Shown here: piece after piece, positions 4,904 to 20,241 of the stretch
Position numbering within the stretch: the stretch's first letter is position 1
Layout: every line of letters begins with the position of its first letter
NCBI GenBank assembly: GCA_000388065.2
Contig: KB932202.1
From: Fonticula alba ATCC 38817
Lineage: Eukaryota; Protista; Nucleariida
DNA: 64,000 nucleotides
Reading direction: 5' to 3' (one strand)
Notes under the pieces: generated by a model
The model's input: the letters and a program-made list of their open reading frames with translations, nothing else
What the model was told of the DNA's origin: nothing
Databases searched by the model: none
Translations under genes and position numbers: made by a program

Positions 4904-6520
4904 TCATCTCAGCACCCAGCACCTGTTGGCGTCGGTGGTCAGTTGCTGGACCAGCTCCGGGCCGATGTACGGCCGGTCGTCCGGGTCCTGGGTCATGCAG
5001 GCGGTTGCCAGAGCGTCAAACTGCGCGACGATGTATGCCTTGGTTGCCAGGAAGGGCGCACGGGGGACCAGCCAGGGGGCCACCGGGACGAAGGCCGGCT
5101 GGTCGCCGCGGATGACCCGGGCGCCGATCTCGTCCGCCGACAGGCCCCGCCAGGGCCGGGCCCCGGTAAACATCTCGGTCACAATGACTCCGAAGGCGTA
5201 GACATCGGACTGGATGCGCACCGCCGGGTCATGGATGCGGGACTTGTCACGCCGAGCCACAAGAAGCTGCGGCGGAAGGAGAGGAGCAGCGACAAGGCAC
5301 GAGGCGCCGAGGCAGGGNNNNNNNNNNNNNNNNNNNNNNNNNNNNNNNNNNNNNNNNNNNNNNNNNNNNNNNNNNNNNNNNNNAATTGTTCCCCACCCCA
5401 AGCAGAATGGGCAGTTCGAGAGGAGCTGTATTGGAGAGGGGAGATGGGGGGGGGGGGGGGGGGGGGGGGAACTCCACAATTAGACCATGGCCTCAGGCAA
5501 GGAGCGCGACAAGTCGGCGGAGTACGCACCTCGGGGGCCGAGTACGCCGCAGTCATGCCGTCGATGAGGGAGTCATTGAGCAGGGCACTTGAGCGGGTGA
5601 TCGGCCGCGCCACACCGAAATCTCCCAGCACCGCCACCCAAGCCCCTGGACGGGTGGTGCCTTGGTCGGGCCCGGCACGTCGGGGGGCCGCCGGGTCCCC
5701 GGCCCGCAAGGTGCTCGGACGGACATAGTGCGGGTCATAGTCGAGGAAGACATTGGCTGGCTTGACATCACAGTGGGCGATTTGGTTGTCGTGCGCATGG
5801 CGCAGGGCCATGGCTGTGGTGAGGCAGGCGGAAAGGGGGGGGGGAGCGGCGGAGGGGCGGCGTGGAAGCCGGGGAACCGGCGTGCACGTGGGTGGGACAA
5901 CAAACCAGAGATCCAGGCACCAGGCAACGGTCAGACATGGGGCCCCGGTGCAGAGAAAAAAAGCGGGAGGGGGGGGGAAGAAAGATGGCTGCCAAAACAT
6001 GAACAACGGACCAAGCTGCTCCAGGATGATGGACAGGTGGCGGAAGGAGGCACGCGGCATGGGGACCTGGCCCTCGACCGGCGGCTCGGAGGAAGCATCA
6101 TCACCAAACGCCTCGCCATTGGCATGGGTGCTGGCGGCCGCATCGGCCAGGAAGGCCGCCAGATCGGTGGTGTAGCGCTGCAGGAAGATGACATACGGCC
6201 GCTCGCTGTAGCCGATGATGTTGGCAATGTGCGCCGCACCGGGCCCTTGGGACTCGGCCAGGGCCCACATGACGGACACCTCCTGCAGGAACATGTCGCG
6301 CTTTTGCTGCAGCGCCTTGCCATCGTCCGGCAGGTGGGTCTTTCGCAAGGTCGAGATGCAGGATACCTTGGCGACGGCGGTGTTGCTGCCGGCGCGCTCG
6401 GCCATGCGCGGGCACAGGAGCGTCACCGGCAGCACACTAGCCTGGGTGCCCTCGCCGAGCGGGACCGGCATCGAGGTGTTGCTCCAGTCGGTGGACGTGT
6501 TCAGGGAGTTGGTCGAGTCG
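4904..6520 (-). other. Protein kinase catalytic domain of the receptor (exons 6-8)
   Basis: All the main catalytic motifs are present. The catalytic loop DVKPAN is Ser/Thr-type. The intron after APE (donor at 5529) spans the N gap and rejoins in phase 0 at 5266. Confidence 0.9.
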
Positions 6521-7547
6521 AAGGAGGGCAGTGACAGCAGGGGCGGCGACAGACGCTCCGCCTCCATGGCATTCACCACCCGCGGCGTGAGACCGGAGGA
6601 GGGCCCTGGCCGCAGGATCGGCGTCAGGGTCGGCAGGCCGGTGCTCAATGGGTCACTCGAATCCGGATCCGAGCCAGACGACCCCGAGTGCATGGAGGAG
6701 GTAGGCGACCGGGTGAGCGAGGAGTGCGAGCTGGACTCGATGAAGTAACCCTTGCCGCTCTTGCTAGGGCCGAAGCCCGGGCGCAAGATTCGCCGGATGT
6801 CCGATGTATCGACCGCGAGCGCGAAGTCCACGCGCAGAATGCCCGGCAAAGCAAGGGCTTGGGGGGGGGGGGGGGGGGGGGGGGGAAATAAGCCGGAGGT
6901 GAGTTGGGACCATCGCGCGATCGCGGCCGGGGCGGGGCCACAAAAAAAAGCACACCGCAGGGAGTCAAGGGGAGTGCGGCAGGGGGCGAGCGAATGGATG
7001 AATGATCGAAAGCCGACCAGGGCCGCCGTACCAGGAAGCGTATTCATGATGGTCATGTCTTCGGGATTGACCCCCTCGACGGATTTGTCTGAAAGGAAAA
7101 AGGGTCAGCCACGGGGCCAAGGGGGAAAGGCAGGAGGATGGGGGGGGGGGGGGAGGGAGAAAGGGCCAGCGAGAGGGAAAGAAAGTGAGCGAGGCAGGCA
7201 GCCGCCCCACATGGACCACCTATTCGGCTGGGTGGAATTTCACCGTGGCCCATTGAACGCACCATCCTGCGACATGTCCCCTTCCGGGCCCTCAATGCGA
7301 TCCATGACCAGAATGGTCTCGGAAATGTGCGTCGGGTAGCCGACCCCGAAGAAGGCCGCCCGCAGCGAGGCCTTCTGCTTGCTTTCCGAGGCAGCCTTCA
7401 GCCGGTGATAGCGCCAGCAGCCGAAGAACAGCCAGAAGCTAAATAGCGTGGCCAGGATCAAGGCAAAGCCAACGCCCATGACTACCCACAGGAGGATGAC
7501 ATCTTTTGGACCACACATGTCCCACGGGAACCGAGCGAAAGAGAGAT

Positions 7548-7586
<39 letters not shown>

Positions 7587-10500
7587 CAGAAGTAACGAAA
7601 TGCCCAGGGAGGGGAGGGTAGGAGGAAAAAGAGTCAGGACCAAGGCCAAGCACCGGCAAGGGCACAGGGGACGGCCCCCGAGGGACACACGCACCCGCGC
7701 CACTGAAGCAGCGATTAAGAGGGTCCTGAGTGCCGGCCTCCCGCAAGATTGAGCAATCCAGTCGCCCGGTGCAGCCCTCGATGCCGGCGTCCGTGCATTG
7801 CTCGCATGCTGGATGACAGGCAAGACACGCCATCGGCACGACGGGCAGGATGGTGGGCCGCGGGATTTCCGACCCCGACACGGTGGACCCCACCGGCCAG
7901 GATGAGGCGGCCGAAGAGTGGCTGTCGGTGGCATTCTCCGACTGCGACAGCAGGCCCACATCGGCCCATGGGGCCTCCAGATCGTAGGACCCATAGAAGC
8001 CCTTCGGGCATTCCGGCAGACAGGACACCAGCTCGGGATTCTCAGTCGAGGGCAGCCGGAAGAAGCCGTCAAAGCAAGTGAGGCACATTGGCGACGTCGT
8101 CGGGATGGGCACCCCATCCACCGAGACGCCAAATACACAGGACCGGCAGCCCGACGGACAGGGCACACACGCGCCCGTGTGAATGTCAATCCCGAAGCCA
8201 GGCTCACACTCATCCTCGCAGGAAATGAGCTCATGCTCGCCAGCGATGTCCACGGCCGCCAGGGCCATTTCGCCGAGTTCGCTCTCGGGAAGAAGCCTCT
8301 CCCGCCGGAGGCCCTCGATCACCATGCACGAGGGCATCGACGCACGAGCCTCCACGCTGCGCCTGGCCGCCAGCAACTTCCGCTGCTGCCCACACTGGGT
8401 GCAAGTGCTGGCGCAAATCCGACACCACCCAGGCAAGGTCAGGGGGACCTGGCCCGGAGGACAGGTCGAGCCACAGGTGCCCCATGGACCGGCCCCACGC
8501 CGGGCGCCCAGCTGACACTCGAAGCAATCGAAGACCGGATGCGGCCCCCGACAGCTGTGGCAATGCGACGGACAGGAAATGCAATGCCGCTTGATGGGCT
8601 CCACAAAGTAGCCAGTCGGGCAGTCCTGCAAGCAAAGGCCAGCCATGCCCGGCGGAGCATCAAGAGGCTTCAGGTCCAGCAGATTGCGCCCGGGAATGCA
8701 GGACTGACACTGGCTCGCGAGCGGCCCGTAGCAGGTCATACAGGCCCCATGGCATGGCTGGCAGACTGGAGTCGCGCCGGTCGAAGAGCCGCCAGCATTC
8801 TTCGGCAGGAAGAAGCCCGGCCCGCAGGAGGGCCGACAGGTGCCCGATTGCAGGACGAACCCCGGATCGCAAGAAAGACATTCCCGATTGGAAGGACCGC
8901 TGCAGGAGGCACAGAAGGGATAGCAGGAGAAGCACGCCTGCGTGGTCGTTGAATTACCGCCGCCGCCGCCGCTGCTGCTGCTGCTGCTGCTGCTGTCGCT
9001 GTTGGCCCCGCCGCCACTATCGCCATTGCTCCCATCGTCAATGCTGCCACCGGTGGGGGAGACGAAAAAGCCACTGGAACAGGCATTCACACAGGAGCCC
9101 TCCTGCAGGAAATCCGTCGGGCTCTCGCAGGAGAGACACTCCGCAGATTGGGCGCCAAAGCAAGAGCCGCAACCCGTCGAGCAGCTCGCACACACGGCTC
9201 CGCGCGCGAACCTCCGCGGACCACAATCAACCACACATTGGCCAACTGCCGGCCCCACGGTGGGGGTCAGATTGGAGCTCAGGAAGAAGCGCCCCCGCTG
9301 GCAGGCAGTGCAGTCCCCGGGGCCGGGACCGATGCATGAAAGGCAGCTACTGTGACAAGCCTGGCAGCCGCGTGTCGAGGCGGGCTCCGGTCCGGGATCT
9401 GCCTCAAGGACAACTTCGAACCACCGGATGGGCGAGCAGGCCGAAATGCACATGGAGTCCTGCAGGACACTGCCAGCGGGGCAGGACGTGCACGTTGTCA
9501 ACCGGGAGGATGTGCACCGCAGGCAGGAGGAATGGCAGGGCAGGCACACGGCCAGGCCGCCATCCACCCCACCGGACTCCGGGGATGCCGAGGCATATGT
9601 CCGGCTGGGGCACGACTCAAGGCATGACCCCATCAGCAGGTGGTCCGGATTCGGGACTGTCTGTTGGAGTTCGGGCGAATAGAGCAACAACCCGGAGCCA
9701 GCGCGACAGGAAAGACACTCCTCCGGGTCCGGTCCGAGGCATTCCCCGCAAGTACCATGGCAGGGCGCACACGAACCATCAAGGCCCATGAAATGCCCGG
9801 AGGGACAAACATCCTCCGACATGCAGGTGCCCGACTCGGCAAGCTGATAGCCCAGCCGGCAGCTGGTGCATGCGCTCGAGGTCGGGCCCACACATGTCTT
9901 ACACAGTGGGTGACATGGCTCGCAAATGCCCGCCTCGGCATCCAGGAAGAAGCCCGAATGGCAGGCCTCCACGCAGAATCCCTGCTGAAGCACCTTGCCA
10001 TCGGGACAACTTGTGCAGCTGTCGGCCGCCAAGCCGGAGCACGTCCGGCAGGACGCATCACATTCGGCACAGGCAAAGCCACCCTGCTCCGGCGAGAGTG
10101 CCAGCAAAACATGCCCGTCGGCACATTCGAGACATGTGCCCAGGGTCGTTGAGGAGGAGCACCTGACACAGGCCGGCCCATCGGCACAGGGGGCACACAC
10201 AGCCATGTCGTCGGGGCCCGAGCCGCCGAACAGCGACTCCTCGAAGGTGGCCGGGGTCGGCGGGGCCATGCCATCTGCACAGTAGGCCGCGCAGACCAGC
10301 CCATCACGCAGGAAGCCCGGCGCGCAGCCGATGCAATCCCCCGGGCCCGGGCCCGCACACCCGGTGGTCGAGTCACATGTGGCATGGCACTCGGCGCAGA
10401 CACCGGTTTCCCCGTCGCCGAGCAAGCCGCGACTCTTGTCCAGGAAGGCCCCAGTCCAGCAGGAAAGACACTGACTCGGGTCCGACCCGGAGCATGTCCG

Positions 10501-13500
10501 ACACCGGGTGTTGCAACGCTGGCAGACGTCCACACCGCCGAGCTCCCGCGGAAGGGTGGCCGGCACGAAGAACGACGCGGCCGAGCACTGGGCCACACAG
10601 TAGCCATCCTCCAGAAGCAGCCCCTCGCGACATTGCATGCATTCTTGGCCATCCGGCGAGCAGGCGGTGCAGTCATCCCCGGCCATGCAGAGGACACACG
10701 CTCCAAAGCGGTCGCCCCACACCGGCGTGAACCCGGGATAGCATTCGCAACTTTCCTGGTCCGCCGTGCAAGTGGCCCCAGACGGGCAGTTGCAATGGAC
10801 ACCGGCCGTCCACAGGATCAGCCCCGAGGGGCTGCTCGGCCCATTGTCCAGCGACGAGGAGGAATCACTGAAGGTGCGCATTGAGTGGCTGGCTTGATCG
10901 CCCAGCAGCGAGGCACTCTGCAGGGTATAGGCCGCGGAAAGGCGCATGGCATGCATCGAATCGGAGCCACTGCCCCCCTTGAGACCGGCAAGCAGCTCCA
11001 TGCTGGTACGACGTGTGATGTAGATCTCCGGCACCCCATCGCCATTGAAGTCCCCGATGGAGATGGCCCCTGTGGGCGACGAAAAGCGCCAAGTGTTCAG
11101 GAAGACAGGCGCATCGTTGAGTGCCGCCTGGAAACGCTCCTCCGGGGTGGTCGCCTCCGCGGCAGATGTCGATGCCGCGGCACCGGCCGAATCCCGAGCC
11201 AAACCGGCCGCCGAGTCCTCCCGTAGGAAGAGCCCCCATGGCGAGGGCGTGGCCGCATGCGGGTCGATGAGGATTTTGTCAAAGCGCCGTGGGATCCCCT
11301 GGGCCAGGAAATTCTCATACACCACCAGGTGCCCCTGCTCGGTGAGGACCACCAGATCGATGTCTCCATCGCGATCCAGGTCGGCCAGTCGCACGGACCA
11401 GGGGGCCTCGCTCCATGCCTGCTCGATGATGAAAGCCGGCGATGGGGACAGGCGACATTGGAGATCCATGCATTCTGGCGACCAAACCCCCAGAGTGGGG
11501 ACATTTCGGCCAACCAGAACCAGCAACAAGTCCGGCCGGCCGTCGCCATCCAAATCATGCGTCCCATCCAGCGACACGACATTCGGATAGAAAAGCGGCA
11601 CGCCCAAAGGCGCCACCAGAAACTGGCTATGCTGGGTGGCGATGGCTGCCACCAGTCCCAGGCGGCTGGGGCCCGTCGATGTGGCTGACCGCCCCTGCCA
11701 GGGGGCATTGGCATCCAGCAGGAAGATGACATCCCCCCGGGGAGCCAGGCCGGCGCCTTCGGCAGAAGTGAATGCCGTGCGCCCGACCGACAGGGCTGCA
11801 TCTGACCCGGGAAGCGCCCCGTAGCCCACCAAACGCCCCCAGCTGAGCCGGACCATGAAGAGATTCGGCCGGGCCCCGGGCGAAGCACCAAGTTCCACGT
11901 CGAAATCGTGCGTCGGCACGCTGATTATGGCCAGGGGATCGCGCGTCGGTGCTCCGGCAACCGCAACCCGCGCCCCGGGCACCGCAAAGCCCCGGATGGT
12001 GGCCGACGCCGGGCGCGACATGTTGATCACCGTGCCCTTGAGGCCGCTGCGTTGGCCATTGGCCCGGGGCACGGGCGTCGAGTAGTAGATCACAGTCGTC
12101 TGGAAGGGGTCCGCCTCGGGGTCGGTCAGCGGTGGAGACCCACTCCCGAGGGCAATGCGCCGCGGACGCAGAACCAACAGCACGCCGATGGCATCGAACC
12201 CCGGGGAAAGGCCCAAGGCCGGGACCAATTGCAGTTCCGACAGCTGGCCACCGAGCACCACCTGCCGGGGCTCCGACCAAGTCAGCCCGCCGGCGCTGTC
12301 CGTTTTGGCTGACACCTGAAACAGCCGGCCCTGGATGTCAACCATGAAATAGGAGTCCCGATCGGCGAAGACAAAGCCAATGTCCGGGTCCCAATGCAGA
12401 GGGAGAATCCCCGTGTCCCGGAGTCCAAACATTGACCCGGGCCAGGGGGAGTCCAACCGCAAGGGGACATTCTTCTGGTCGATCGGCTTGCACCGGCCGC
12501 GGATGACCGACCATGCTTCGCCGGCCGGCCCCGGCCCCGGCCCCGGCCCCGGCCCCGGCGCCGAGGAAGAGGAAGATGTGGCCGAAAGGGCGCCAGACGG
12601 GATGTCCGGCAGAAGGGCGGCCGCTTGCTTTCGCAGGGCCTCCATGATGGGCGAACTGTGGATCGGATTTCTCAGCTGGCCGGCCTGCTGGAGCAGCTTG
12701 CGCGAGTGTGTCGGGTATAATTCGCTTGGTGGGGTTTCCTCGAGATCACAAGTCCTGGAACAAACACCATCCGCCCGCAGAACCAGCCCCGGGGCACACT
12801 GATAGCAAATGCCCGTTCCGTCATCGCGGCAGTCCAGGCAGTCTTCCGGGCACCGGCGGCAGACTGGTACAGCAGCCGACAGGAGTTCCGGCCGTGTGAC
12901 AGGGACACATGTCCGAGGAAATGGGCCCGGCAGAGGGAGGAAGGGACACCGGAAGTTAGCGCATGATGGGGCAGAGGATGATGGCACTTTGGGGGTCGGA
13001 AGCGAAAGAAGGACAGATGCCAGGCGGGAGGAGGAGCATTCGCACATGGGAAGACACCCGATCCCGGGGCACAGGCCCGGCAATAGCCGGTGAAGTTGTG
13101 GATGAACTGCTCGCTGGCACAGGCGCAGGGAGCCCAGAAGTCCGGCTCATGCATGGCCGGCGGTGGCCATGTGCTGGGAACATCGGCACATGTGCCCCCC
13201 GCACCGCAGCCACACCCGACCAGTGTCGAAGACCGGCTATACACCTCCACCGAGTGCCGGCCCCGCAGAGATACCACCAACTCGGCGAAGCCATCGCCAT
13301 CGAGATCCGCCGCCCAGAAGGCCGTGATCGACAGCGGCGGCTCGTGGCCCTCGGCCGATAGGCGCTCGAACACCGGCGGCCGAAAGCCGACAGGTGCCTC
13401 GCTGAAAAGCATGGCATTCGTCTGGAAGATGGCATTGCTCGGCCGCTGGGGAAGCACCGCCAGTGGCCGGCTCAAAAACAGTCGGATGCGCGCCTGGCCC

Positions 13501-15699
13501 CACCCGACAAACAAGTCGGCCACACCATCGCCATCGGCATCGGTGGCCACCAGGAAGGCCCGCTCCACCGGGAGCACGGTGTCCAGGGGGAATTCAAACG
13601 CCAAGGCGCCCAAATCCACAAGCCTGGAGTCACCGGTTTCGGAGAAGAGATTGCGCAGAAGACGAATCGGCCGCCGGGGAGCCGCAACCGGAGGGAAGTT
13701 GTTTGTCGGCCAGCCGGGCGGCGGCGGGGTGTCCGCCAACAATGCCCCACGTTGCGAAGGGGTTTGGGGCGCCGCGACGGGCATCTCCGACCAGGTGGCC
13801 AACAGGGCCACATCCATGTCGCCATCGCCATCAAAGTCCCCGGCCACCAGGGCATGGATGACGCCATTGGTGAAGGTGATCAAGCGAATGGGCCGCACCG
13901 AGCCATTGGTCGAGGGCTCCGTCGAACCAAGGAGGGGCGCCGGGATGTGCCACAAAACATGCGAGGTCCCACAATCCAAGGGCCGAGGCTCGGTCACCTC
14001 GGCACAGCTGACCACCAAAAGATCATCCAGGCCCGACCCGGGGACCAGCTCCACGGCCAGCGTGCGCAGGACCACCGAGGGAATGGAAAAGAGGCTTTGA
14101 CCACCGGGCGAGAGGAAGATCGACACGGTGTTCCGCTCGATGACCGACAACGGGGTCAGGCGATCCGGCAGGGAGAAGCGCCCAGATACCACATACCGGC
14201 GGGCGGACTGCACCATTTCCCCCCGGGGCAGGTGCATCTGCATGCCCTCACGGTGAATGTGCACCAAGTGCGGAAGAGGCAGCGGATTGACCCGAGAGCT
14301 TTCCGCCTGCCCGAGCCAGCGGATGGCCCCTGTCGGGTCCACCCCGAGCGACGTCCCGAACAGCGTGGTCCCGGACACCGACAGGCGGAATTCCGGCCAA
14401 TTGACCAGCCCCTCGGTGTCGCAGGCCGAGCGCCGAGTGACCTCGGCCACGGAAGTGTGGTTGGGGCCTGTGCCCAGGAAGAGCCGCGAAGGGCCGGACC
14501 CGGGCTCGGAAACGTCGCCAATCGGATGGAAGATCGGGTAAGAAGCAATGCTCACCCGGCGCATTTGAGCCGACAACGGGCCAAAGGCCAGCTCTGTCAC
14601 CGGCGCGATGGACCGCATCTCGGTGACCCAGGAGAAGGAGCCAACATCGACCGCCTGAATCGGGCACAGGGGCAGCTCATCCGAGGCATCTTCGGAACTG
14701 CCACCACCAGGACCAGGGCCCAGAGAGGGCTCGGAGCCCGGGACAGGCATGGTGAAAGAGCCAGCTTCCGGACCAGACCCGGGAGGGGGACCGGAGCGGG
14801 AGCCGGGGCCGGAGCGAGAGCCGGAGCCAAAGTCGGAACTGGAACTGGGGCTGGGGCTGGGGCTGCTGCTTGAGTCAAGATCAGTCGGGCTGCCATCATG
14901 ACTGCCAGCAAGCTTGGTATGCTGATCGGCACTGCCAGTGGTCTCGGGGGTGTGGGGGCCGCCACGCGCGCCACCAATCGCATGGTCGGTGTCGCCGATC
15001 GGATTTCCCATGCTGCGGGACCCTGAACCGGGCCAGCTGCCGGACGAGGTGGCCGGGTCGGAGGTGGGCAAGGAAGCCCTGGCGACCGAGCTGGGGATGC
15101 TTTGCGGACGCGATGCCGCGACAACACGCATCTTGGACTTGGACCAATCCCGCGACTTGACCGACCAGGGCCGACAGGGGACGCCAGACCCACTGGATGA
15201 GGAAGAGCTGGCATCTTGCGAACTACCATGCATGGATGGCTCTCCCGGGGATGGTGAGGGAGAGGCAGATAAAGCGCCACTCGAGTTGGAAGTAGCAGCC
15301 GGAGTGGCCATGCCAGACGTGGTAGTGGCATTTGAAGGGGAAGACCTTGAGGAGGCTCCGGCAACTTGAACTCCGACTGGCTGGTTTCCATGCCAAGCAG
15401 TGGCCGGGCCGGGAGCCGCAGCTGTGGTTGATGCGCACACGCCGACCGCATAGTCGAAGCCATCGGGACAGGTGGTTGCCTCGATGCAGTGACCACCCGC
15501 CAGCAGGAAGCCCTCTTGACACCAGAGACAAACCCCGGGGAAGCGCCGGTCACATGTGTGACATCCCTCGAAACAACGACTGGTACAGGCTATCGAGAGG
15601 AGGGGTTATCATGCTTTGTGTCAGATGGGGGGGGGAGAAGGGGGAGAAGGGGGAGAAGGGGGAGAAGAAGAAAAAGAAGAAGAAAAATAAAAAGGAGAC

Positions 15700-15746
<47 letters not shown>

Positions 15747-18278
15747 CGCACCTGTGCCAGCGAAGCCCGGGCGACAAAACTCACACCTGCCCACCGAGTC
15801 ATGTTGAATGTTGGCCGCGCAAGCGCACACATTGCCATCCATAGAAGGGTAAGGATAGAGCCCGGCATCCAGAGACGTCGGCCAGCGACAGCCACCGGAG
15901 GCACCGCAATCGCAAAGAGCTCCACTTGAGGTGGCGACTGCCAGGGCCGCCTCGGTGGCTGGCACCAACACCACAACCAGCGTCTCGCTGTTGGCCGTAT
16001 TGAGGAGAGTCGATGCGTTGGAGAAGAAAGGCATTGGATGGATGAGGGGGCTTTCAACGGGCAGACGTGAAAACCCGAGCACCACCTCCGCATGCCCATC
16101 CCCATTGAGGTCCAACACCTCCATCCAACGGACTGGCGAGAGGGCCAAGCGATCGCGCACGACCGGCGGAAGGGTCGCACGGGTCCAGGCCCGCCCGGAG
16201 GGAGTGAGCTCTGCCGGGCCAGCGGCCGGCATCTGTGCCAGCGGACCCAGGAAGTAGCCCAATTCGCCGGACGCACAGAGGACCACCACATCGACCATGC
16301 CATCGGCATTGACGTCTGCCAGCCGGACCCATCCCACACTTGTCAGGCAGGGAACCGGCAATGTGTGAAGCGAGTAGTGCGGCTGGGCGTCGGGGGATCC
16401 GCACGCCCCGGCCAACAGGGCCGACAGAGCAAGCTTGCCCCCGGAGCCGGAGGTCAGAAGCACAAAGTCCGCACAGGGGGATGGCATGGAACCCCCATCG
16501 AGCTTGGTCAGATGAGCTGGCCGGGCAAACACGACCGACTGCGCCTCCAAGGGAAGAGTGAACAACACCTCCGGCGGGAAGTCCATCGTGGTGGCTGGAG
16601 ACGAAGCCACCACGGATGTACGCAACCGCAAGAGCTTGATGGGTGTGGTGGCTGACGGCCGATGGCGCAACATGACCAGCAAGTCCGGGTCGCCATCCCC
16701 ATCGGTATCAGCCGAGGACAGCCAAATCCCCTCCGGAGGAGGCCGGGACTCAGAGGCGGAGGGGGAGATTGAAAATGTGGCTGGCCCATCTGCCGATGAG
16801 GCCGGAGAACTGCCCGCCGAAAAGCCAGACACCGAGGAGGAAGCCGACTCGAAGGAGGACCCGGGGACATGGCTCGAGGGTGCCCCAGATGAGGAGGACG
16901 AGAAGGAGAGAGAGGAAGAAGAGGCGCCCGATGAGGATGCGGCAGCTGATGAAGAAGAGGCGCCCGATGAGGATGCGGCAGCTGATGAAGAGGAGGAAGC
17001 AGCCGGTGAGGAAGCAGCAGCTGATGATGAGGAGGAAGCAGCCGGTGAGGAAGCAGCAGCTGATGATGAGGAGCCAGCCGGCGAAGAGGCGTCTGCCGTT
17101 GAGGAGGAGGCAGCCAATGAGGAGGAGGCAGCTGGCGAAGAGGCGTCTGTCGACGAGGCATCTGCCGGCGGGGAGGAGCCTGTCGAGGAGGCATGTGAGG
17201 AGTGTGGCGCGGATCCGGTCGAGGAGGTGGAAGTGTCCGAAAAAGAGCCGGAGGTAGAAAAGGAGGCAGATCCCTGTCCAGGCGGGGCTGACTTGGCGGC
17301 TGGCCATCCGAGCTCGGGCCGCAGGACCAAAGGGATGTCAGCAGCCCATGATGCGGTCGTGGAAAAGGGCCGTCCGGGTGTCACCATTGGCAGGACCAGA
17401 TCCCGAAAGAGGACCAAATGCCCCGAGGAAGAGGTGATGCCAACGAGTGCTGTCAGGCGCTTGGAGGCCGACCCGAAAAGGGCCACCGGCTGCTGGTCGA
17501 CAGCCTGAAAGAAAACGAGATCCTCCTCCGGAAGCCAGAACGAGGGCATCACATCGAAGGAAAACCGGCATTCGGCCATCAGGGCCACCCGGATCGGGGA
17601 GTTGGATGCATGCGCGGTGGATCGAATGACAAACACCGAACGCGAGTCGCTCCAGGGGTGCTCATCCAAACCGGCGATGCGGAGGGAGGGCGCGTCGCCA
17701 CCGACGGCAGAAGCCCCGGCAGCCTGACTCAGGGGCAGCCCGGCCGGACAGCCCGCCGCCGGCACAACACCCGGTCCGGGACTCGAACTGCCATGGGCCG
17801 GAGGGGGTGTCCCGGGGGGGACCGATGCGGCGAGCCGTAGCCAGGGCCCGGTGGCCAAGGAGGCGGTCGATCGCCAGGGCAACACCGGGGAGGCATGCAT
17901 CAAAAGCCCGGCCACGGTGCTGCCTGCCTCGAAGCATAGCTCCAGCGTGCCGTCCGCGCGCATGGCGGACCCGTGCCAGGTGTGCCAGGCGTCCACCGGG
18001 ATCGGCGCATCGGCTGAGTAGGATGCCGGTACGAAGGATGTGGCGCTCAGCAGGAACTCAATCCCCGGATTTGGGGAAGTGCTTGTCCGTGTCGAGCGCG
18101 AGCGCGGAGGCCCCGGCTCGGCTCCGGCCCCGGGGGCCAACAATAGAAATAAGAGAAAAACCCCGATCAAACCGACACCCGGGCGAGATGCCAGTTGGGG
18201 GGAGAGGTGGCACCGCCGCCGGCCAGCATGTGGCCTAATCGGCGGCTCGAGGCCAGCCGAGGCATTACGGGAAACCAT
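4904..18278 (-). CDS. Giant single-pass receptor Ser/Thr (TKL-like) kinase, ~4,005 aa: signal peptide, 3x(FG-GAP module + EGF-like), ~15 furin-like repeats, TM, kinase
   Basis: Manual exon join: 18278-15752, 15589-~13058 (alternative donor at 13046), 12863-7695, 7502-7263, 7088-7032, 6857-6012, 5813-5530, 5266-4904. All junctions are GT-AG and phase-compatible, totalling ~12,018 nt. There is an in-frame stop just upstream of the ATG at 18278. The protein has a signal h-region (GLIGVFLLFLLLAPGAGA), a TM helix (VILLWVVMGVGFALILATLFSFWLFFGCW) and kinase motifs LGEGTQASV, VAK, FLQEVSVM, HCDVKPANVF, GDFG, YSAPE, SDVYAFG and PDDRP. Confidence 0.85.
5318..5383. other. Assembly gap inside the last intron of the receptor kinase
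   Basis: A run of N. The flanking exons join in frame (APE|LLV), so no exon needs to be missing. Confidence 0.95.
7780..10700 (-). repeat. Array of ~15 furin-like cysteine-rich repeats in the receptor ectodomain
   Basis: Recurrent CxxCxxxCxxC units include CQRCNTRCRTC, CAECDASCRTC, CEPCHPLCKTC, CAPCHGTCGEC, CLPCHSSCLRC, CQACHSSCLSC, CASCSTGCGSC, CFSCYPFCASC, CQPCHGACMTC, CISCPSHCHSC, CRICASTCTQC, CVPCPSGCRSC and CLACHPACEQC. Confidence 0.9.
11020..16720 (-). other. Nine FG-GAP/VCBS-type Ca2+-binding DxDxDG motifs arranged 3+3+3
   Basis: Exon 1: DTDGDGDPDL, DVNADGMVDV, DLNGDGHAEV. Exon 2: DFDGDGDMDV, DADGDGVADL, DLDGDGFAEL. Exon 3: DLDGDGRPDL, DLDRDGDIDL, DFNGDGVPEI. Confidence 0.85.
15699..15746. 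repeat. (GAT)n microsatellite, ~15 units, inside receptor intron 1
   Basis: A perfect gatgatgat... run lies next to GAA/GGGGAGAA repeats, between the donor at 15751 and the acceptor at 15590. Confidence 0.9.
16915..17170 (-). repeat. Coding tandem repeats (36 nt x2, 39 nt x2, plus degenerate copies) encoding a Ser/Ala-rich linker
   Basis: gaagaagaggcgcccgatgaggatgcggcagctgat occurs at 16915 and 16951. gaggaggaagcagccggtgaggaagcagcagctgatgat occurs at ~16990 and ~17029. On the - strand these translate as SSSSAAASSPAA / SSSSAAASSSGA. Confidence 0.85.
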
Positions 18279-18875
18279 GGTAGCCAGTCAGGGCGGCGGG
18301 CGCATAGCACTGCACGAAGTAGGACTGGTGAGAATGAAAGCAAGGGGAGGAGAAGAGAGGGGAGGGGAGGAGAGGGGGAGAGACACAGAGAGACACAGAG
18401 AGACAGAGAGAGAGAGAGAGAGAGACAGAGAGGAAAAGAAGCCGCGAGGAAAAAGGGGGGAAGGTGAATGGAGGCCCAACACCTGGGGAACAGGCGGGCA
18501 GCGGGGAGGGCGAACCATCACAGGCTGCTCGGGCAGCAACGGGTAGGACGAACGGAGTGGAGGAGTCCAGGGAGCCAGAGAATGCGATCCGGCGATCGGG
18601 AGGAGAGGGCGCGGGTGGATGGGGCCGAGGAGCAATGGGGGAGGGGAGAAGAGAGGGGGAGCAGGAGGAGGAGGAGCGGGAAGATGGGGGGATGATCGGA
18701 AGGGAAGGAGAAGTGAGGGAGATGGGTTCTGGTGTCTGCGGACTTCGGAAAACCTGGCCTCTGCCCAGACAGGCATCTGAAGGGTGACGAAAAGCAGGCC
18801 CTCGCGGCGGGGCGGCGGAAGGCCCGGAAGATGTTGTGGGCGCGGAGACCATCCCGTCCTGGGGGGGGGGGGGGG

Positions 18876-19557
18876 NNNNNNNNNNNNNNNNNNNNNNNNN
18901 NNNNNNNNNNNNNNNNNNNNNNNNNNNNNNNNNNNNNNNNNNNNNNNNNNNNNNNNNNNNNNNNNNNNNNNNNNNNNNNNNNNNNNNNNNNNNNNNNNNN
19001 NNNNNNNNNNNNNNNNNNNNNNNNNNNNNNNNNNNNNNNNNNNNNNNNNNNNNNNNNNNNNNNNNNNNNNNNNNNNNNNNNNNNNNNNNNNNNNNNNNNN
19101 NNNNNNNNNNNNNNNNNNNNNNNNNNNNNNNNNNNNNNNNNNNNNNNNNNNNNNNNNNNNNNNNNNNNNNNNNNNNNNNNNNNNNNNNNNNNNNNNNNNN
19201 NNNNNNNNNNNNNNNNNNNNNNNNNNNNNNNNNNNNNNNNNNNNNNNNNNNNNNNNNNNNNNNNNNNNNNNNNNNNNNNNNNNNNNNNNNNNNNNNNNNN
19301 NNNNNNNNNNNNNNNNNNNNNNNNNNNNNNNNNNNNNNNNNNNNNNNNNNNNNNNNNNNNNNNNNNNNNNNNNNNNNNNNNNNNNNNNNNNNNNNNNNNN
19401 NNNNNNNNNNNNNNNNNNNNNNNNNNNNNNNNNNNNNNNNNNNNNNNNNNNNNNNNNNNNNNNNNNNNNNNNNNNNNNNNNNNNNNNNNNNNNNNNNNNN
19501 NNNNNNNNNNNNNNNNNNNNNNNNNNNNNNNNNNNNNNNNNNNNNNNNNNNNNNNNN
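18876..19557. other. Assembly gap (~680 N) flanked by poly-G on both sides
   Basis: A run of N bounded by G homopolymers. Confidence 0.99.
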
Positions 19558-20241
19558 GGGGGGGGGAGGGGGGCGGGCTTGCGACCAAGGCTGGCAAGAG
19601 GGCGTTGCTTCGAGCCGGCAATCGCCGCCACGCCGGGGATGGTCACAGGCGGATGGAGGAGGACCGGCTGGCCAGTGGCCACTCTCACTGGTGGGCGTCC
19701 AATGCCTCTGCCCCGAGTAGAAGAGGCAGGACCGCACATGCAGGCCAGCGCGGAATATTATTCATCGCACCAAGGGGCCCGCACGACCCATGGGGAGAAG
19801 CACAACTGCCCTTTCGAGCGCCGGAGCGGTACCCGCCCTGCCCCTTCTCGCCCGGTCCTGGACAACCTGGACGATGCCCCCGCGCGCGCGCGCGCGCTCG
19901 CTCAGAGCGGGCAGGATCTCCCGGACGACTTTTTCGGGGAGGCCACCACAAGCTGGCCGGCTGGAATGCCCCTCCCCCCCCCCCCCCCCCCCCCCCCCCA
20001 ACTCCCCCCCCCCCCTCCACCCCCCCCCCGGGCGAGACCTAATATACAACGGCCCCACACCACACCCCCGAGGGCAGACCGGCCACCACTGGAGGGAAGA
20101 AGAGCGCCGAGCGTGCCCCCGAGGTTCCCGGCCCATCGGGGCAGGTCCGCCAAGCCCCGCGCGAGGCCCGACCGCGGACAGGGCTCCCCCCCCCCCCCGC
20201 GGCGGGGGGGGGGGGGGGGGGGGGGGCTGGGCCACGTCTGG

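What the first reader, a model, noticed from the sequence alone, without database searches (positions are those of the whole stretch)
4904..18278. ~4,000-aa receptor kinase with three tandem integrin-alpha-like (FG-GAP) modules, EGF units and a furin-repeat stalk
Seen: four ORF-track ORFs (15621-18278, 12672-15440, 7240-13083, 5179-7056) splice through phase-compatible GT-AG introns into one frame. It runs signal peptide -> [~700-840 aa module with three DxDxDG motifs in its C-terminal half + Cys-rich EGF-like unit] x3 -> ~15 furin-like repeats -> TM -> intact Ser/Thr kinase. Established: integrin-alpha beta-propellers carry Ca2+-binding DxDxDG hairpins in their last three or four blades, and fungi are not known to have canonical integrin heterodimers. 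Inference: each module may fold as one propeller, giving an adhesion or ligand-sensing receptor with three propellers wired directly to a kinase. That is a candidate surface sensor for substrate, prey or cell-cell contact in an amoeboid opisthokont. Furin-repeat TKL receptors are not unusual in such protists; the triple FG-GAP head is the notable part.
Basis: partly seen in the sequence, partly recalled or inferred. Interest (0 to 1): 0.8.

Follow-up and report, generated by a model that had tools for sequence, protein, structure and literature searches.

The report
Giant triple FG-GAP receptor kinase gene
A single 13-kb gene of the slime-mould-like amoeba Fonticula alba encodes a 4,005-residue surface receptor with three calcium-loop (FG-GAP) heads, a cysteine-rich stalk and a protein kinase; this is an unusual variant of a known kind of receptor in an organism reported to lack obvious integrins and cadherins.

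Summary
On the minus strand, eight exons (18278-4904) join through seven GT-AG introns of 162-263 nt into one 12,018-nt frame of 4,005 aa with no internal stop. The assembly gap 5318-5383 lies inside intron 7. RNA contigs join 5530 directly to 5266 across it. RNA contigs also confirm introns 3, 4 and 6 as joints and intron 5 by length arithmetic. One contig runs from the kinase through the membrane segment into the furin stalk. Introns 1 and 2, which link the three heads, are supported by sequence logic only.

The protein has nine cation loops in three groups of three, and Pfam FG-GAP scores above cut-off in each group. It also has 15 furin-like repeats, one membrane segment and a divergent non-RD kinase with all catalytic motifs.

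An AlphaFold model of head 2 matches complete seven-bladed propellers (Z about 17), but the alignment behind it favoured that fold. Head 3 gave only three or four blades, and head 1 was not folded.

It is not an integrin alpha: it has no leg domains and no GFFKR tail. The scan noted FG-GAP/furin paralogues, with or without a kinase, elsewhere in this genome. FG-GAP heads fused to kinases were reported in two amoebozoans. Verdict: a new variant of a known kind.

The parts
4904..18278 (-). Whole coding region. Eight exons: 18278-15752, 15589-13058, 12863-7695, 7502-7263, 7088-7032, 6857-6012, 5813-5530, 5266-4904 (stop included). 4,005 aa.
   Evidence: One search gives one frame with no internal stop and GT..AG at all seven introns. 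One search gives RNA joints for introns 3, 4 and 6, a loose end for intron 7, and intron 5 by arithmetic.
18120..18278 (-). Start codon (ATG at 18278) and putative signal peptide, aa 1-53. An in-frame TGA lies 12 nt upstream of the ATG.
   Evidence: The signal peptide is read by eye, not predicted by a tool.
15909..18116 (-). Head module 1, aa 55-790. It has three cation loops (aa 524, 655, 723) and a 170-aa Ser-rich insert (aa 330-500, window 16779-17291).
   Evidence: FG-GAP_3 30.6 bits and FG-GAP 28.6 bits, both above cut-off..
15426..15914 (-). Cysteine-rich cap 1, aa 789-897 (CxC unit plus one furin-like repeat), split by intron 1 (15751-15590).
   Evidence: Only the 15590 acceptor keeps the frame and the Cys pattern.
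14685..15425 (-). Ser/Pro/Gly-rich linker 1, aa 898-1144. Probably disordered and mucin-like.
   Evidence: Composition. The mucin-like reading is inference.
13221..14684 (-). Head module 2, aa 1145-1632. Cation loops at aa 1427, 1526 and 1604, plus a degenerate loop near aa 1360. Modelled as a seven-bladed propeller.
   Evidence: FG-GAP_3 47.7 bits; pTM 0.64; Foldseek E 3e-6 to integrin alpha heads; Z 16-17.7 over residues 22-490.
12748..13220 (-). Cysteine-rich cap 2, aa 1633-1725, split by intron 2 (13057-12864) at the same place in the unit as intron 1.
10771..12522 (-). Head module 3, aa 1801-2384. Cation loops at aa 2123, 2181 and 2291. The fold of the N-terminal half is unresolved.
   Evidence: FG-GAP_3 47 bits. 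In one search only aa 311-540 of the query find relatives..
7708..10770 (-). Cap 3 plus a stalk of about 15 furin-like / GF_recep_IV repeats, aa 2385-3405, with 125 Cys.
   Evidence: (GF_recep_IV 34.5 bits, 7 stretches), and (PCSK5-type Cys-rich repeats are the best hits).
7420..7695 (-). Single membrane segment, aa 3410-3437, just after intron 3 (7694-7503).
   Evidence: the only hydrophobic stretch of this kind; joint 7502|7695 in four runs.
6466..7419 (-). Juxtamembrane region, aa 3438-3639. It includes the 57-nt micro-exon 7088-7032 and the motif NPEDMTIMNTLPALALPG, which is shared with paralogues.
   Evidence: joint 7088|7263 and contig arithmetic for 6857|7032. (the motif is conserved without an indel in P0192 and P0214).
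4934..6465 (-). Protein kinase domain, aa 3640-3996, in exons 6-8. It is non-RD (HCD). GxGxxA, AVAK, the alpha-C Glu, DVKPAN, DFG, APE, DVYAFG and DPDDRP are all present, and there are three inserts.
   Evidence: (25-29% identity to Fonticula TKL kinases, E down to 3e-31).
5318..5383 (.). Assembly gap, inside intron 7 (5529-5267).
   Evidence: In one search the loose end at 5530 reads into 5266.

Best explanation
This is one expressed Fonticula alba gene for a type I membrane receptor Ser/Thr kinase of 4,005 aa. It belongs to a lineage-specific family of receptor kinases with furin-repeat stalks.

From the outside in, the protein has these parts:
- three globular heads, each ending in three Ca2+-loop FG-GAP blades and a cysteine-rich cap;
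- Ser/Pro-rich linkers between the heads;
- a rigid stalk of about 15 furin-like repeats;
- one membrane helix;
- a 200-aa juxtamembrane region carrying a family motif;
- a divergent but motif-complete non-RD kinase.

Most likely each head is a seven-bladed FG-GAP beta-propeller whose last three or four blades bind Ca2+. This is shown at moderate confidence for head 2 and inferred for heads 1 and 3.

The rest is inference. The heads would bind an extracellular ligand in a Ca2+-dependent way. By analogy with other FG-GAP propellers, the ligand could be a glycan or surface polymer of bacterial prey, of the substrate or of other cells. Ligand-driven clustering would then bring the kinases together for trans-phosphorylation. 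Adhesion or ligand sensing and kinase signalling would thus sit in one polypeptide.
For: Gene and transcript:
- One frame runs through seven GT-AG introns of similar size with similar donors.
- RNA joints or equivalents support introns 3-7, and one RNA contig runs from the kinase exon to the furin stalk.
- Exons 2 and 3 have no start codon with a signal peptide of their own.
- Introns 1 and 2 interrupt the cysteine-rich cap at the same position.
- The junction of exons 5 and 6 reproduces a paralogue motif without an indel.

Domains:
- Pfam FG-GAP/FG-GAP_3 score above cut-off three times, and GF_recep_IV scores above cut-off. PK_Tyr_Ser-Thr scores 32 bits on the C-lobe piece.
- There are nine cation loops against 0.1 expected by chance.

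Fold:
- The head 2 model has pTM 0.64.
- Foldseek gives E 3e-6 to integrin alpha heads.
- The same model matches ITFG2, BBS2, TIP and CRTAC1.
- VIA-align gives Z 16-17.7 over residues 22-490.

Kinase and family:
- All catalytic motifs align with Fonticula TKL kinases.
- Fonticula paralogues combine furin repeats with a kinase, and some also carry FG-GAP loops.
Against: - Introns 1 and 2 have no RNA test. Run X1 held only 5% of the sampled words of 12600-15900.
- RNA depth is about 25 times higher over the last 1.5 kb than upstream. This fits 3' bias but also a shorter transcript.
- The propeller model of head 2 rests on an alignment of seven-blade bacterial segments, has TM-scores of only 0.3-0.4 in Foldseek, and is weak in its first 160 residues.
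- Head 3 did not fold into a full propeller.
- The N-terminal halves of the heads have no relatives and no detectable blades.
- The kinase N-lobe is not recognised by Pfam or by PDB sequence search.
- No ligand, localisation or activity data exist.
Confidence: 0.62

Rival explanations
1. Each head is a composite rather than one propeller. It would be a short FG-GAP arc of three or four blades, or a propeller completed by another chain or another head, preceded by an unrelated lineage-specific beta-rich domain.
For: - Only the nine loop-bearing blades are found by Pfam, by a blade profile built from this protein and by a profile of 400 bacterial blades.
- The N-terminal halves have no hits at all and do not resemble each other.
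- The head 3 model is confident only for three or four blades.
- Published 'Type II' FG-GAP heads of amoebozoans include short ones with 3-5 blades.
Against: - Each head, once its disordered inserts are removed, has about the size of a seven-bladed FG-GAP propeller (about 480-560 aa).
- The head 2 model aligns end to end with whole seven-bladed propellers.
- Language-model features of the N-terminal half of head 2 point weakly to FG-GAP families (score 0.74).
- Degenerate FG / loop-like strings can be read by eye in the N-terminal half of head 2.
Confidence: 0.25
2. The locus gives more than one product. One form of this is a secreted or separately anchored protein from exon 1, or exons 1-2, plus a shorter receptor kinase. 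Another is an abundant kinase-only transcript from an internal start.
For: - Introns 1 and 2 are untested by RNA.
- Depth steps from about 150-180 to 2-7 near 6320-6590.
- Read-through of intron 1 meets a stop at 15621.
Against: - The depth step lies at different places in the two samples (about 6330 and about 6585), as expected for 3' bias rather than a fixed start.
- One contig crosses from the kinase into the stalk.
- Exons 2 and 3 lack a start codon with a signal peptide although they encode Cys-rich extracellular repeats.
- The furin-like repeat is only complete across introns 1 and 2.
Confidence: 0.1
3. The protein is mainly an adhesin, or a pseudokinase scaffold. The kinase would be catalytically weak or dead, and the protein would act through adhesion and docking rather than phosphotransfer.
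For: - The kinase is very divergent: 25-29% identity to its own paralogues.
- Its N-lobe is missed by Pfam and PDB searches.
- It has HCD instead of HRD and three inserts.
- A kinase-less FG-GAP/furin paralogue exists (P0183).
Against: All residues needed for catalysis are present: the VAIK Lys, the alpha-C Glu, the catalytic Asp and Asn, DFG and APE. Non-RD kinases are commonly active receptors; this last point is from general knowledge and was not tested here.
Confidence: 0.12

Closest known systems
Fonticula alba furin-repeat receptor kinases and FG-GAP/furin surface proteins (for example 'TKL protein kinase' entries of 2,087-2,513 aa, a 2,471-aa 'serine/threonine protein kinase', and H696_03801 of 2,959 aa)
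   Same: - They share a furin-like Cys-rich stalk, a single membrane segment, the juxtamembrane motif NPEDMTIMNT..L.LPG, and a kinase with the family strings GYSE.P and RSSAL.
- Some paralogues carry one to three FG-GAP cation loops.
   Different: - This gene is the largest, with nine loops in three ordered heads, each with its own cap.
- Its kinase is only 25-29% identical to the paralogues.
- Its heads have no paralogue match beyond single loops.
Integrin alpha subunits (metazoan and other amorphean)
   Same: - FG-GAP blades carry the cation motif D-h-D/N-x-D/N-G-x-x-D/E in the last three blades of a head (motif as quoted).
- The last four blades of the head 2 model align with integrin blades 4-7.
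- It is a type I membrane protein.
   Different: - It has no thigh or calf leg domain and no KxGFFxR tail.
- It has three heads instead of one, a furin stalk and a kinase.
- The blades' nearest sequence relatives are bacterial.
- The F. alba genome is reported to lack obvious integrins (PMC9097593).
'Type II ITGA' of Amoebozoa (Kang et al., bioRxiv 10.1101/2020.04.29.069435)
   Same: An FG-GAP head is combined with domains not seen in animal integrins. Two of the 23 proteins have a protein kinase domain, and one has an EGF-like domain just after the head.
   Different: - Those have a single head, and no furin-repeat stalk is described for them.
- They come from a different supergroup, and homology to this gene was not tested.
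Entamoeba histolytica transmembrane kinases (TMK families; PATMK, EhTMKB1-9)
   Same: They are amoebal type I receptors with a CXXC-rich, furin/VSP-like ectodomain, one membrane segment and a kinase. PATMK takes part in phagocytosis of erythrocytes (PMC2211552 and PMC2880585, listed).
   Different: No FG-GAP heads are known for them (from my own knowledge). They are much smaller and come from an unrelated lineage.
Receptors with beta-propeller heads of other repeat types: MET/RON (Sema propeller plus PSI), ROS1/Sevenless (several YWTD propellers on a tyrosine kinase), LRP5/6 (four YWTD propeller-EGF pairs), M. tuberculosis PknD (NHL propeller on a Ser/Thr kinase)
   Same: The design principle is shared: one or several propellers, each followed by a small Cys-rich module, wired through one membrane helix to a kinase or co-receptor tail. 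This comparison is from my own knowledge and concerns how the protein may work, not membership.
   Different: - The propeller repeat families differ. No Sema, Ldl_recept_b or NHL hit was found here.
- The kinase groups differ.
- There is no evidence of common descent.

Membership tests
FG-GAP / VCBS repeat superfamily | Pfam FG-GAP (PF01839) or FG-GAP_3 (PF13517) above the curated cut-off | tested here: met
   FG-GAP_3 scores 30.6, 47.7 and 47.0 bits (cut-off 26.9). FG-GAP scores 28.6, 32.8 and 31.9 bits (cut-off 22.1). The three scores are for the three pieces.
FG-GAP / VCBS repeat superfamily | Closed seven-bladed beta-propeller fold | tested here: inconclusive
   The head 2 model has pTM 0.64 and reaches Z 16-17.7 to whole seven-bladed propellers, but the alignment favoured that fold and Foldseek TM-scores are 0.3-0.4. 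Head 3 shows only 3-4 blades. Head 1 was not folded.
Integrin alpha | Cation-binding loops in the last 3-4 blades of the head | tested here: met
   There are three loops per head, all in the C-terminal half and all fitting D-h-D/N-x-D/N-G-x-x-D/E. The motif definition is quoted.
Integrin alpha | Leg domains (thigh and calf; Integrin_alpha2 / IPR013649) | tested here: not met
   No such Pfam hit at E up to 0.1 in any piece. Each head is followed by Cys-rich caps and furin repeats instead.
Integrin alpha | Cytoplasmic KxGFFxR motif after the membrane segment | tested here: not met
   There is no GFF.R string anywhere in the protein. The tail starts CWRYHRLKAA.
Integrin alpha | Heterodimer with an integrin beta subunit | not testable with these tools
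   The genome could not be searched here. PMC9097593 states that the F. alba genome lacks obvious integrins.
Eukaryotic protein kinase (TKL-like receptor Ser/Thr kinase) | Catalytic motifs: Gly loop, VAIK Lys, alpha-C Glu, HxD..N, DFG, APE, and subdomains IX and XI | tested here: met
   One search shows LGEGTQAS, AVAK, FLQEV, HCDVKPAN, DFG, SAPE, DVYAFG and DPDDRP. In Pfam, PK_Tyr_Ser-Thr scores 32.7 bits (cut-off 23.1) on the C-lobe, while Pkinase scores 28.6 bits on exon 7, below its cut-off.
Eukaryotic protein kinase (TKL-like receptor Ser/Thr kinase) | Placement in the TKL group by phylogeny | not tested
   Only indirect evidence exists. The best relatives are Fonticula proteins named TKL by their source, and the best PDB matches of the C-lobe are EGFR and FLS2.
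Furin-like / growth-factor-receptor Cys-rich repeat proteins | Repeated CxxC...CxxC units recognised by GF_recep_IV / Furin-like models | tested here: met
   GF_recep_IV scores 34.5 bits (cut-off 29.5) in 7 stretches. There are 15 units by pattern. PCSK5 Cys-rich regions are the best hits.
YWTD-propeller receptors (ROS1/Sevenless, LRP5/6) | Ldl_recept_b (YWTD) repeats | tested here: not met
   No such Pfam hit was found. The resemblance is an analogy of design only.

The most novel reading that the evidence does not exclude
Fonticula alba is reported to lack obvious integrins and cadherins. It may use a lineage-specific family of FG-GAP-propeller receptor kinases, with this triple-headed one as the extreme member, as its adhesion-and-signalling system. 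The family could serve prey recognition or the cell-cell contacts of its collective invasion and fruiting. Integrin-like Ca2+-dependent ligand binding and kinase signalling would then be merged in one chain. This would be an independent solution to the task that integrins plus focal-adhesion kinases perform in animals.
Probability: 0.15. Interest if true: 0.75.

Novelty: new variant of a known kind. Interest (0 to 1): 0.5.

Why it matters
Fonticula alba belongs to the sister lineage of fungi and forms aggregative fruiting bodies and invasive cell collectives. No adhesion or contact-sensing molecules are known for it, and its genome is reported to lack obvious cadherins, integrins and Dictyostelium-type adhesion molecules (PMC9097593).

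A transcribed 4,005-aa surface receptor with three Ca2+-loop heads wired to a kinase is a concrete candidate to test for prey, substrate or cell-contact sensing.

The gene also shows how freely FG-GAP heads, furin stalks and kinases were recombined in amoeboid lineages. No copy of its product turned up in two very large public protein collections. The public gene set may therefore miss it, possibly because of the assembly gaps.

Tried and rejected
- **Orthologue searches:** phmmer of head 3 against 1.84 billion representatives gave only generic FG-GAP repeat matches to aa 311-540, mostly giant bacterial proteins, and no self-hit. Word-indexed searches with head 2 and with exon 1 gave one weak hit and none. 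The search with the 1,947-aa ORF returned PCSK5-type repeats and the Fonticula paralogues but not this gene's own product.
- **Public gene model:** it could not be fetched, because a spliced protein has no reference in these tools.
- **Hidden blades in the N-terminal halves:** a profile of this protein's nine blades, a profile of 400 bacterial blades, Pfam at E up to 10 and pairwise hhalign all found nothing.
- **PDB sequence search:** the heads gave nothing significant. CRTAC1 was the only hit, at E 0.12.
- **AlphaFold of head 3:** the model was of low confidence, with pLDDT 51.
- **Atlas feature search:** the N-terminal halves gave weak leads only, to FG-GAP for head 2 and BNR for head 3.
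- **Alternative acceptor:** an acceptor 10 nt inside exon 2 was considered and rejected. It shifts the frame into an ORF ending at 14597 and destroys the furin-like Cys pattern.
- **ORFs 18265-19739:** these run through a second N gap and are artefacts.
- **RNA runs labelled 'organism B':** they were not used, because their link to this genome is only a species label.

Full report
**Gene model**

The region is GC-rich (about 65%) and the long ORFs of the finding all lie on the minus strand. I read the inter-ORF stretches and placed seven GT..AG introns: 15751-15590, 13057-12864, 7694-7503, 7262-7089, 7031-6858, 6011-5814 and 5529-5267. They are 162-263 nt long. Their donors are mostly GTGCGT. 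Introns 1-6 are in phase 1 and intron 7 in phase 0.

Joining the eight exons gives 12,018 nt, or 4,005 codons, with one terminal stop. The ATG at 18278 has an in-frame TGA 12 nt upstream. A second assembly gap (18876-19556) lies further upstream, and the 'ORFs' at 18265-19739 merely run through it.

**The flagged assembly gap**

The N run 5318-5383 sits inside intron 7, between the donor after ...SAPE (5530) and the acceptor ...ccgcag (5267). Its unknown length therefore cannot affect the frame.

**RNA evidence**

Four 2012 RNA runs of one organism hold 51-56% of the sampled words of 5384-7800. This is close to the 63% of that stretch that the model calls exon. One of those runs, X1, held only 5% of the words of 12600-15900.

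I laid the four runs on 5384-11383, with these results:
- All four runs show the joints 5813|6012, 7088|7263 and 7502|7695. Each reads CT..AC on the plus strand, that is GT..AG on the minus strand.
- One 1,350-nt contig runs 6314-6849, then has 65 unplaced letters, then 7263-7502 and 7695-8203. The 65 letters equal 8 nt of exon 6 plus the 57-nt micro-exon, so intron 5 is confirmed by arithmetic. The tool had skipped the poly-C tract there.
- This contig physically links the kinase N-lobe, the juxtamembrane region, the membrane segment and the furin stalk.
- A loose end at 5530 in all four runs reads, in reverse complement, the first 30 nt of exon 8 at 5266. This confirms intron 7 across the gap.
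- Patchy low cover without further joints reaches 11246.
- Depth is about 150-180 over the last 1.5 kb of the mRNA and 2-7 upstream. The step lies at about 6330 in one sample and about 6585 in the other. I read this as 3' bias, but an internal start is not excluded.

The single read-laying run and its 6-kb limit left introns 1 and 2 untested. Four arguments support them:
- Only these sites keep the frame.
- Each completes a furin-like Cys repeat that is otherwise broken, at the same position of the repeated cap unit.
- Exons 2 and 3 have no start codon followed by a signal peptide, although they encode Cys-rich extracellular repeats.
- The alternative acceptor 10 nt downstream in exon 2 shifts into an ORF that ends at 14597.

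**Architecture**

Pfam finds FG-GAP_3 and FG-GAP above their curated cut-offs in each of the three upstream pieces, and GF_recep_IV above cut-off in the stalk. PK_Tyr_Ser-Thr passes its cut-off on the C-lobe piece, while Pkinase stays just under its cut-off on the separate pieces.

Other features:
- Nine loops fit D-x-D/N-x-D/N-G-x-x-D/E. They fall in three groups of three, at aa 524/655/723, 1427/1526/1604 and 2123/2181/2291. Shuffles give 0.1 on average and at most 2.
- Each group is followed by a CxC-type Cys-rich cap with one furin-like repeat.
- Ser/Pro/Gly-rich low-complexity stretches lie inside head 1 (aa 330-500) and between the heads.
- After head 3 come 15 furin-like units with 125 Cys in 1,021 aa.
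- The only membrane-type hydrophobic segment is at aa 3410-3437.
- A juxtamembrane region of about 200 aa follows, and then the kinase.

**Kinase**

The kinase is divergent. Pfam and PDB sequence searches miss its N-lobe, and the best PDB matches of the C-lobe are EGFR and FLS2.

Aligned with six Fonticula paralogues, it has every catalytic element: LGEGTQAS, AVAK, the alpha-C Glu, HCDVKPAN (non-RD, Ser/Thr-type), DFG, SAPE, DVYAFG and DPDDRP. It also has three inserts.

The motif NPEDMTIMNT..L.LPG just before the kinase is shared with paralogues across the junction of exons 5 and 6 without an indel. This supports that splice at the protein level.

**Organism and family**

The 1,947-aa ORF finds PCSK5-type Cys-rich regions and ciliate surface proteins. 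It also finds a set of Fonticula alba proteins. Several are named TKL or Ser/Thr kinases of 1,353-2,513 aa with furin repeats. One is a 2,959-aa protein with FG-GAP and GF_recep_IV but no kinase. Among these proteins, two carry two or three cation loops.

Three earlier first-reader notes of this scan describe such FG-GAP/furin receptors, with or without a kinase, elsewhere in the same genome. The scan has therefore seen this family before, on other DNA.

No search returned this gene's own product. The product is either absent from those collections or, for the word-indexed tool, outside its length window.

**Are the heads propellers, and are they integrin-like?**

*Sequence level.* Only the loop-bearing C-terminal part of head 3 (aa 311-540 of 591) has relatives. 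The best are giant bacterial FG-GAP/VCBS proteins with TIG, Big or RTX domains. The three heads match each other only at the loops. Neither Pfam at E up to 10 nor two blade profiles find blades in the N-terminal halves.

*Head 3 model.* With a 45-row alignment the model has pLDDT 51 and pTM 0.46, and only three or four blades are confident. Foldseek gave nothing below E 0.04, and VIA-align gave Z about 9 for partial propellers.

*Head 2 model.* I aligned it with 98 seven-blade segments cut from the bacterial hits.
- The model has pLDDT 61 and pTM 0.64.
- In the PDB, Foldseek ranks integrin alpha-5, alpha-IIb and alpha-V heads first (E 3e-6 to 1e-4, TM 0.31-0.40).
- In Swiss-Prot models, the matches are ITFG2, BBS2, lambda-carrageenase, aldos-2-ulose dehydratase, integrins, GPI-PLD, TIP and CRTAC1. 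Integrin blades 4-7 align with the last four blades of the head.
- VIA-align gives Z 16-17.7 over residues 22-490 against complete seven-bladed propellers. ITFG2 is on top, integrin alpha-V reaches Z 16.5 with about 326 aligned residues at 4.5 A, and WD40 propellers score equally well.

Head 2 therefore probably forms one seven-bladed propeller. The alignment biased the model towards that fold, and the first 160 residues are weak, so this is moderate support and not proof.

*Integrin membership.* Membership fails on tested features: there is no leg domain and no GFFKR tail. Two resemblances remain. The cation loops are confined to the last blades, as quoted for animal integrin alpha, and the protein has a type I membrane topology.

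**Literature**

- Toret et al. state that the F. alba genome lacks obvious cadherins, integrins and Dictyostelium-like adhesion molecules (PMC9097593).
- Kang et al. describe 'Type II' FG-GAP heads in Amoebozoa. Two of these have a protein kinase domain and one has an EGF-like domain after the head (10.1101/2020.04.29.069435). A propeller-to-kinase fusion is therefore not unprecedented.
- Entamoeba transmembrane kinases are the known amoebal receptors with CXXC-rich ectodomains, and PATMK acts in phagocytosis.
- I found no paper on Fonticula receptor kinases.

**Mechanism (inference)**

The three Ca2+-loaded heads sit on flexible, probably glycosylated linkers above a rigid furin-repeat stalk, and would bind an external ligand. 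FG-GAP propellers elsewhere bind proteins (integrins) or carbohydrates (a fungal lectin and polysaccharide-degrading enzymes appear among the fold matches). Bacterial or matrix glycans and cell-surface partners are therefore both plausible ligands.

Multivalent binding would cluster the receptors and activate the non-RD kinase by trans-phosphorylation. None of this was tested.

**Verdict**

The gene is a striking but lineage-specific variant of a known kind of receptor, a receptor kinase with propeller heads on a furin stalk. It is not an integrin.

Noticed in passing
window 18876-19556: A second assembly gap of about 680 N lies 600 nt upstream of the start codon. The long minus- and plus-strand 'ORFs' listed at 18265-20042 run through it and are artefacts. 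Any 5' exon or promoter of this gene could be hidden there.
   Followed up: partly
window 5530-6590 versus 6600-11250: RNA contig depth is about 25 times higher over the last 1.5 kb of the mRNA than upstream. The step lies at about 6330 in one sample and about 6585 in the other. This is 3' bias or a shorter transcript.
   Followed up: partly
window 7032-7088 and 6830-6857 (protein aa 3497-3516): A juxtamembrane motif, NPEDMTIMNT..L.LPG, is conserved in at least two Fonticula receptor-kinase paralogues (P0192, P0214). Here it is encoded across a 57-nt micro-exon. It may be a family-specific regulatory or docking element.
   Followed up: partly
window 15700-15751, 7540-7600, 18380-18450: Several simple repeats lie in non-coding parts of the gene. 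There is a (TCA)n run at the start of intron 1, which reads as poly-Ser if the intron is retained. There are (CT)n runs in intron 3 and in the 5' leader. Long poly-C tracts lie in introns 4, 5 and 7.
   Followed up: no
whole gene 4904-18278: No search of the two large public protein collections returned this gene's own product, although paralogues from the same species were returned. The public annotation may lack or truncate this gene.
   Followed up: partly
window 18290-18310: A short upstream ORF (ATG CGC CCG CCG CCC TGA) ends 12 nt before the main start codon, in the same frame.
   Followed up: no
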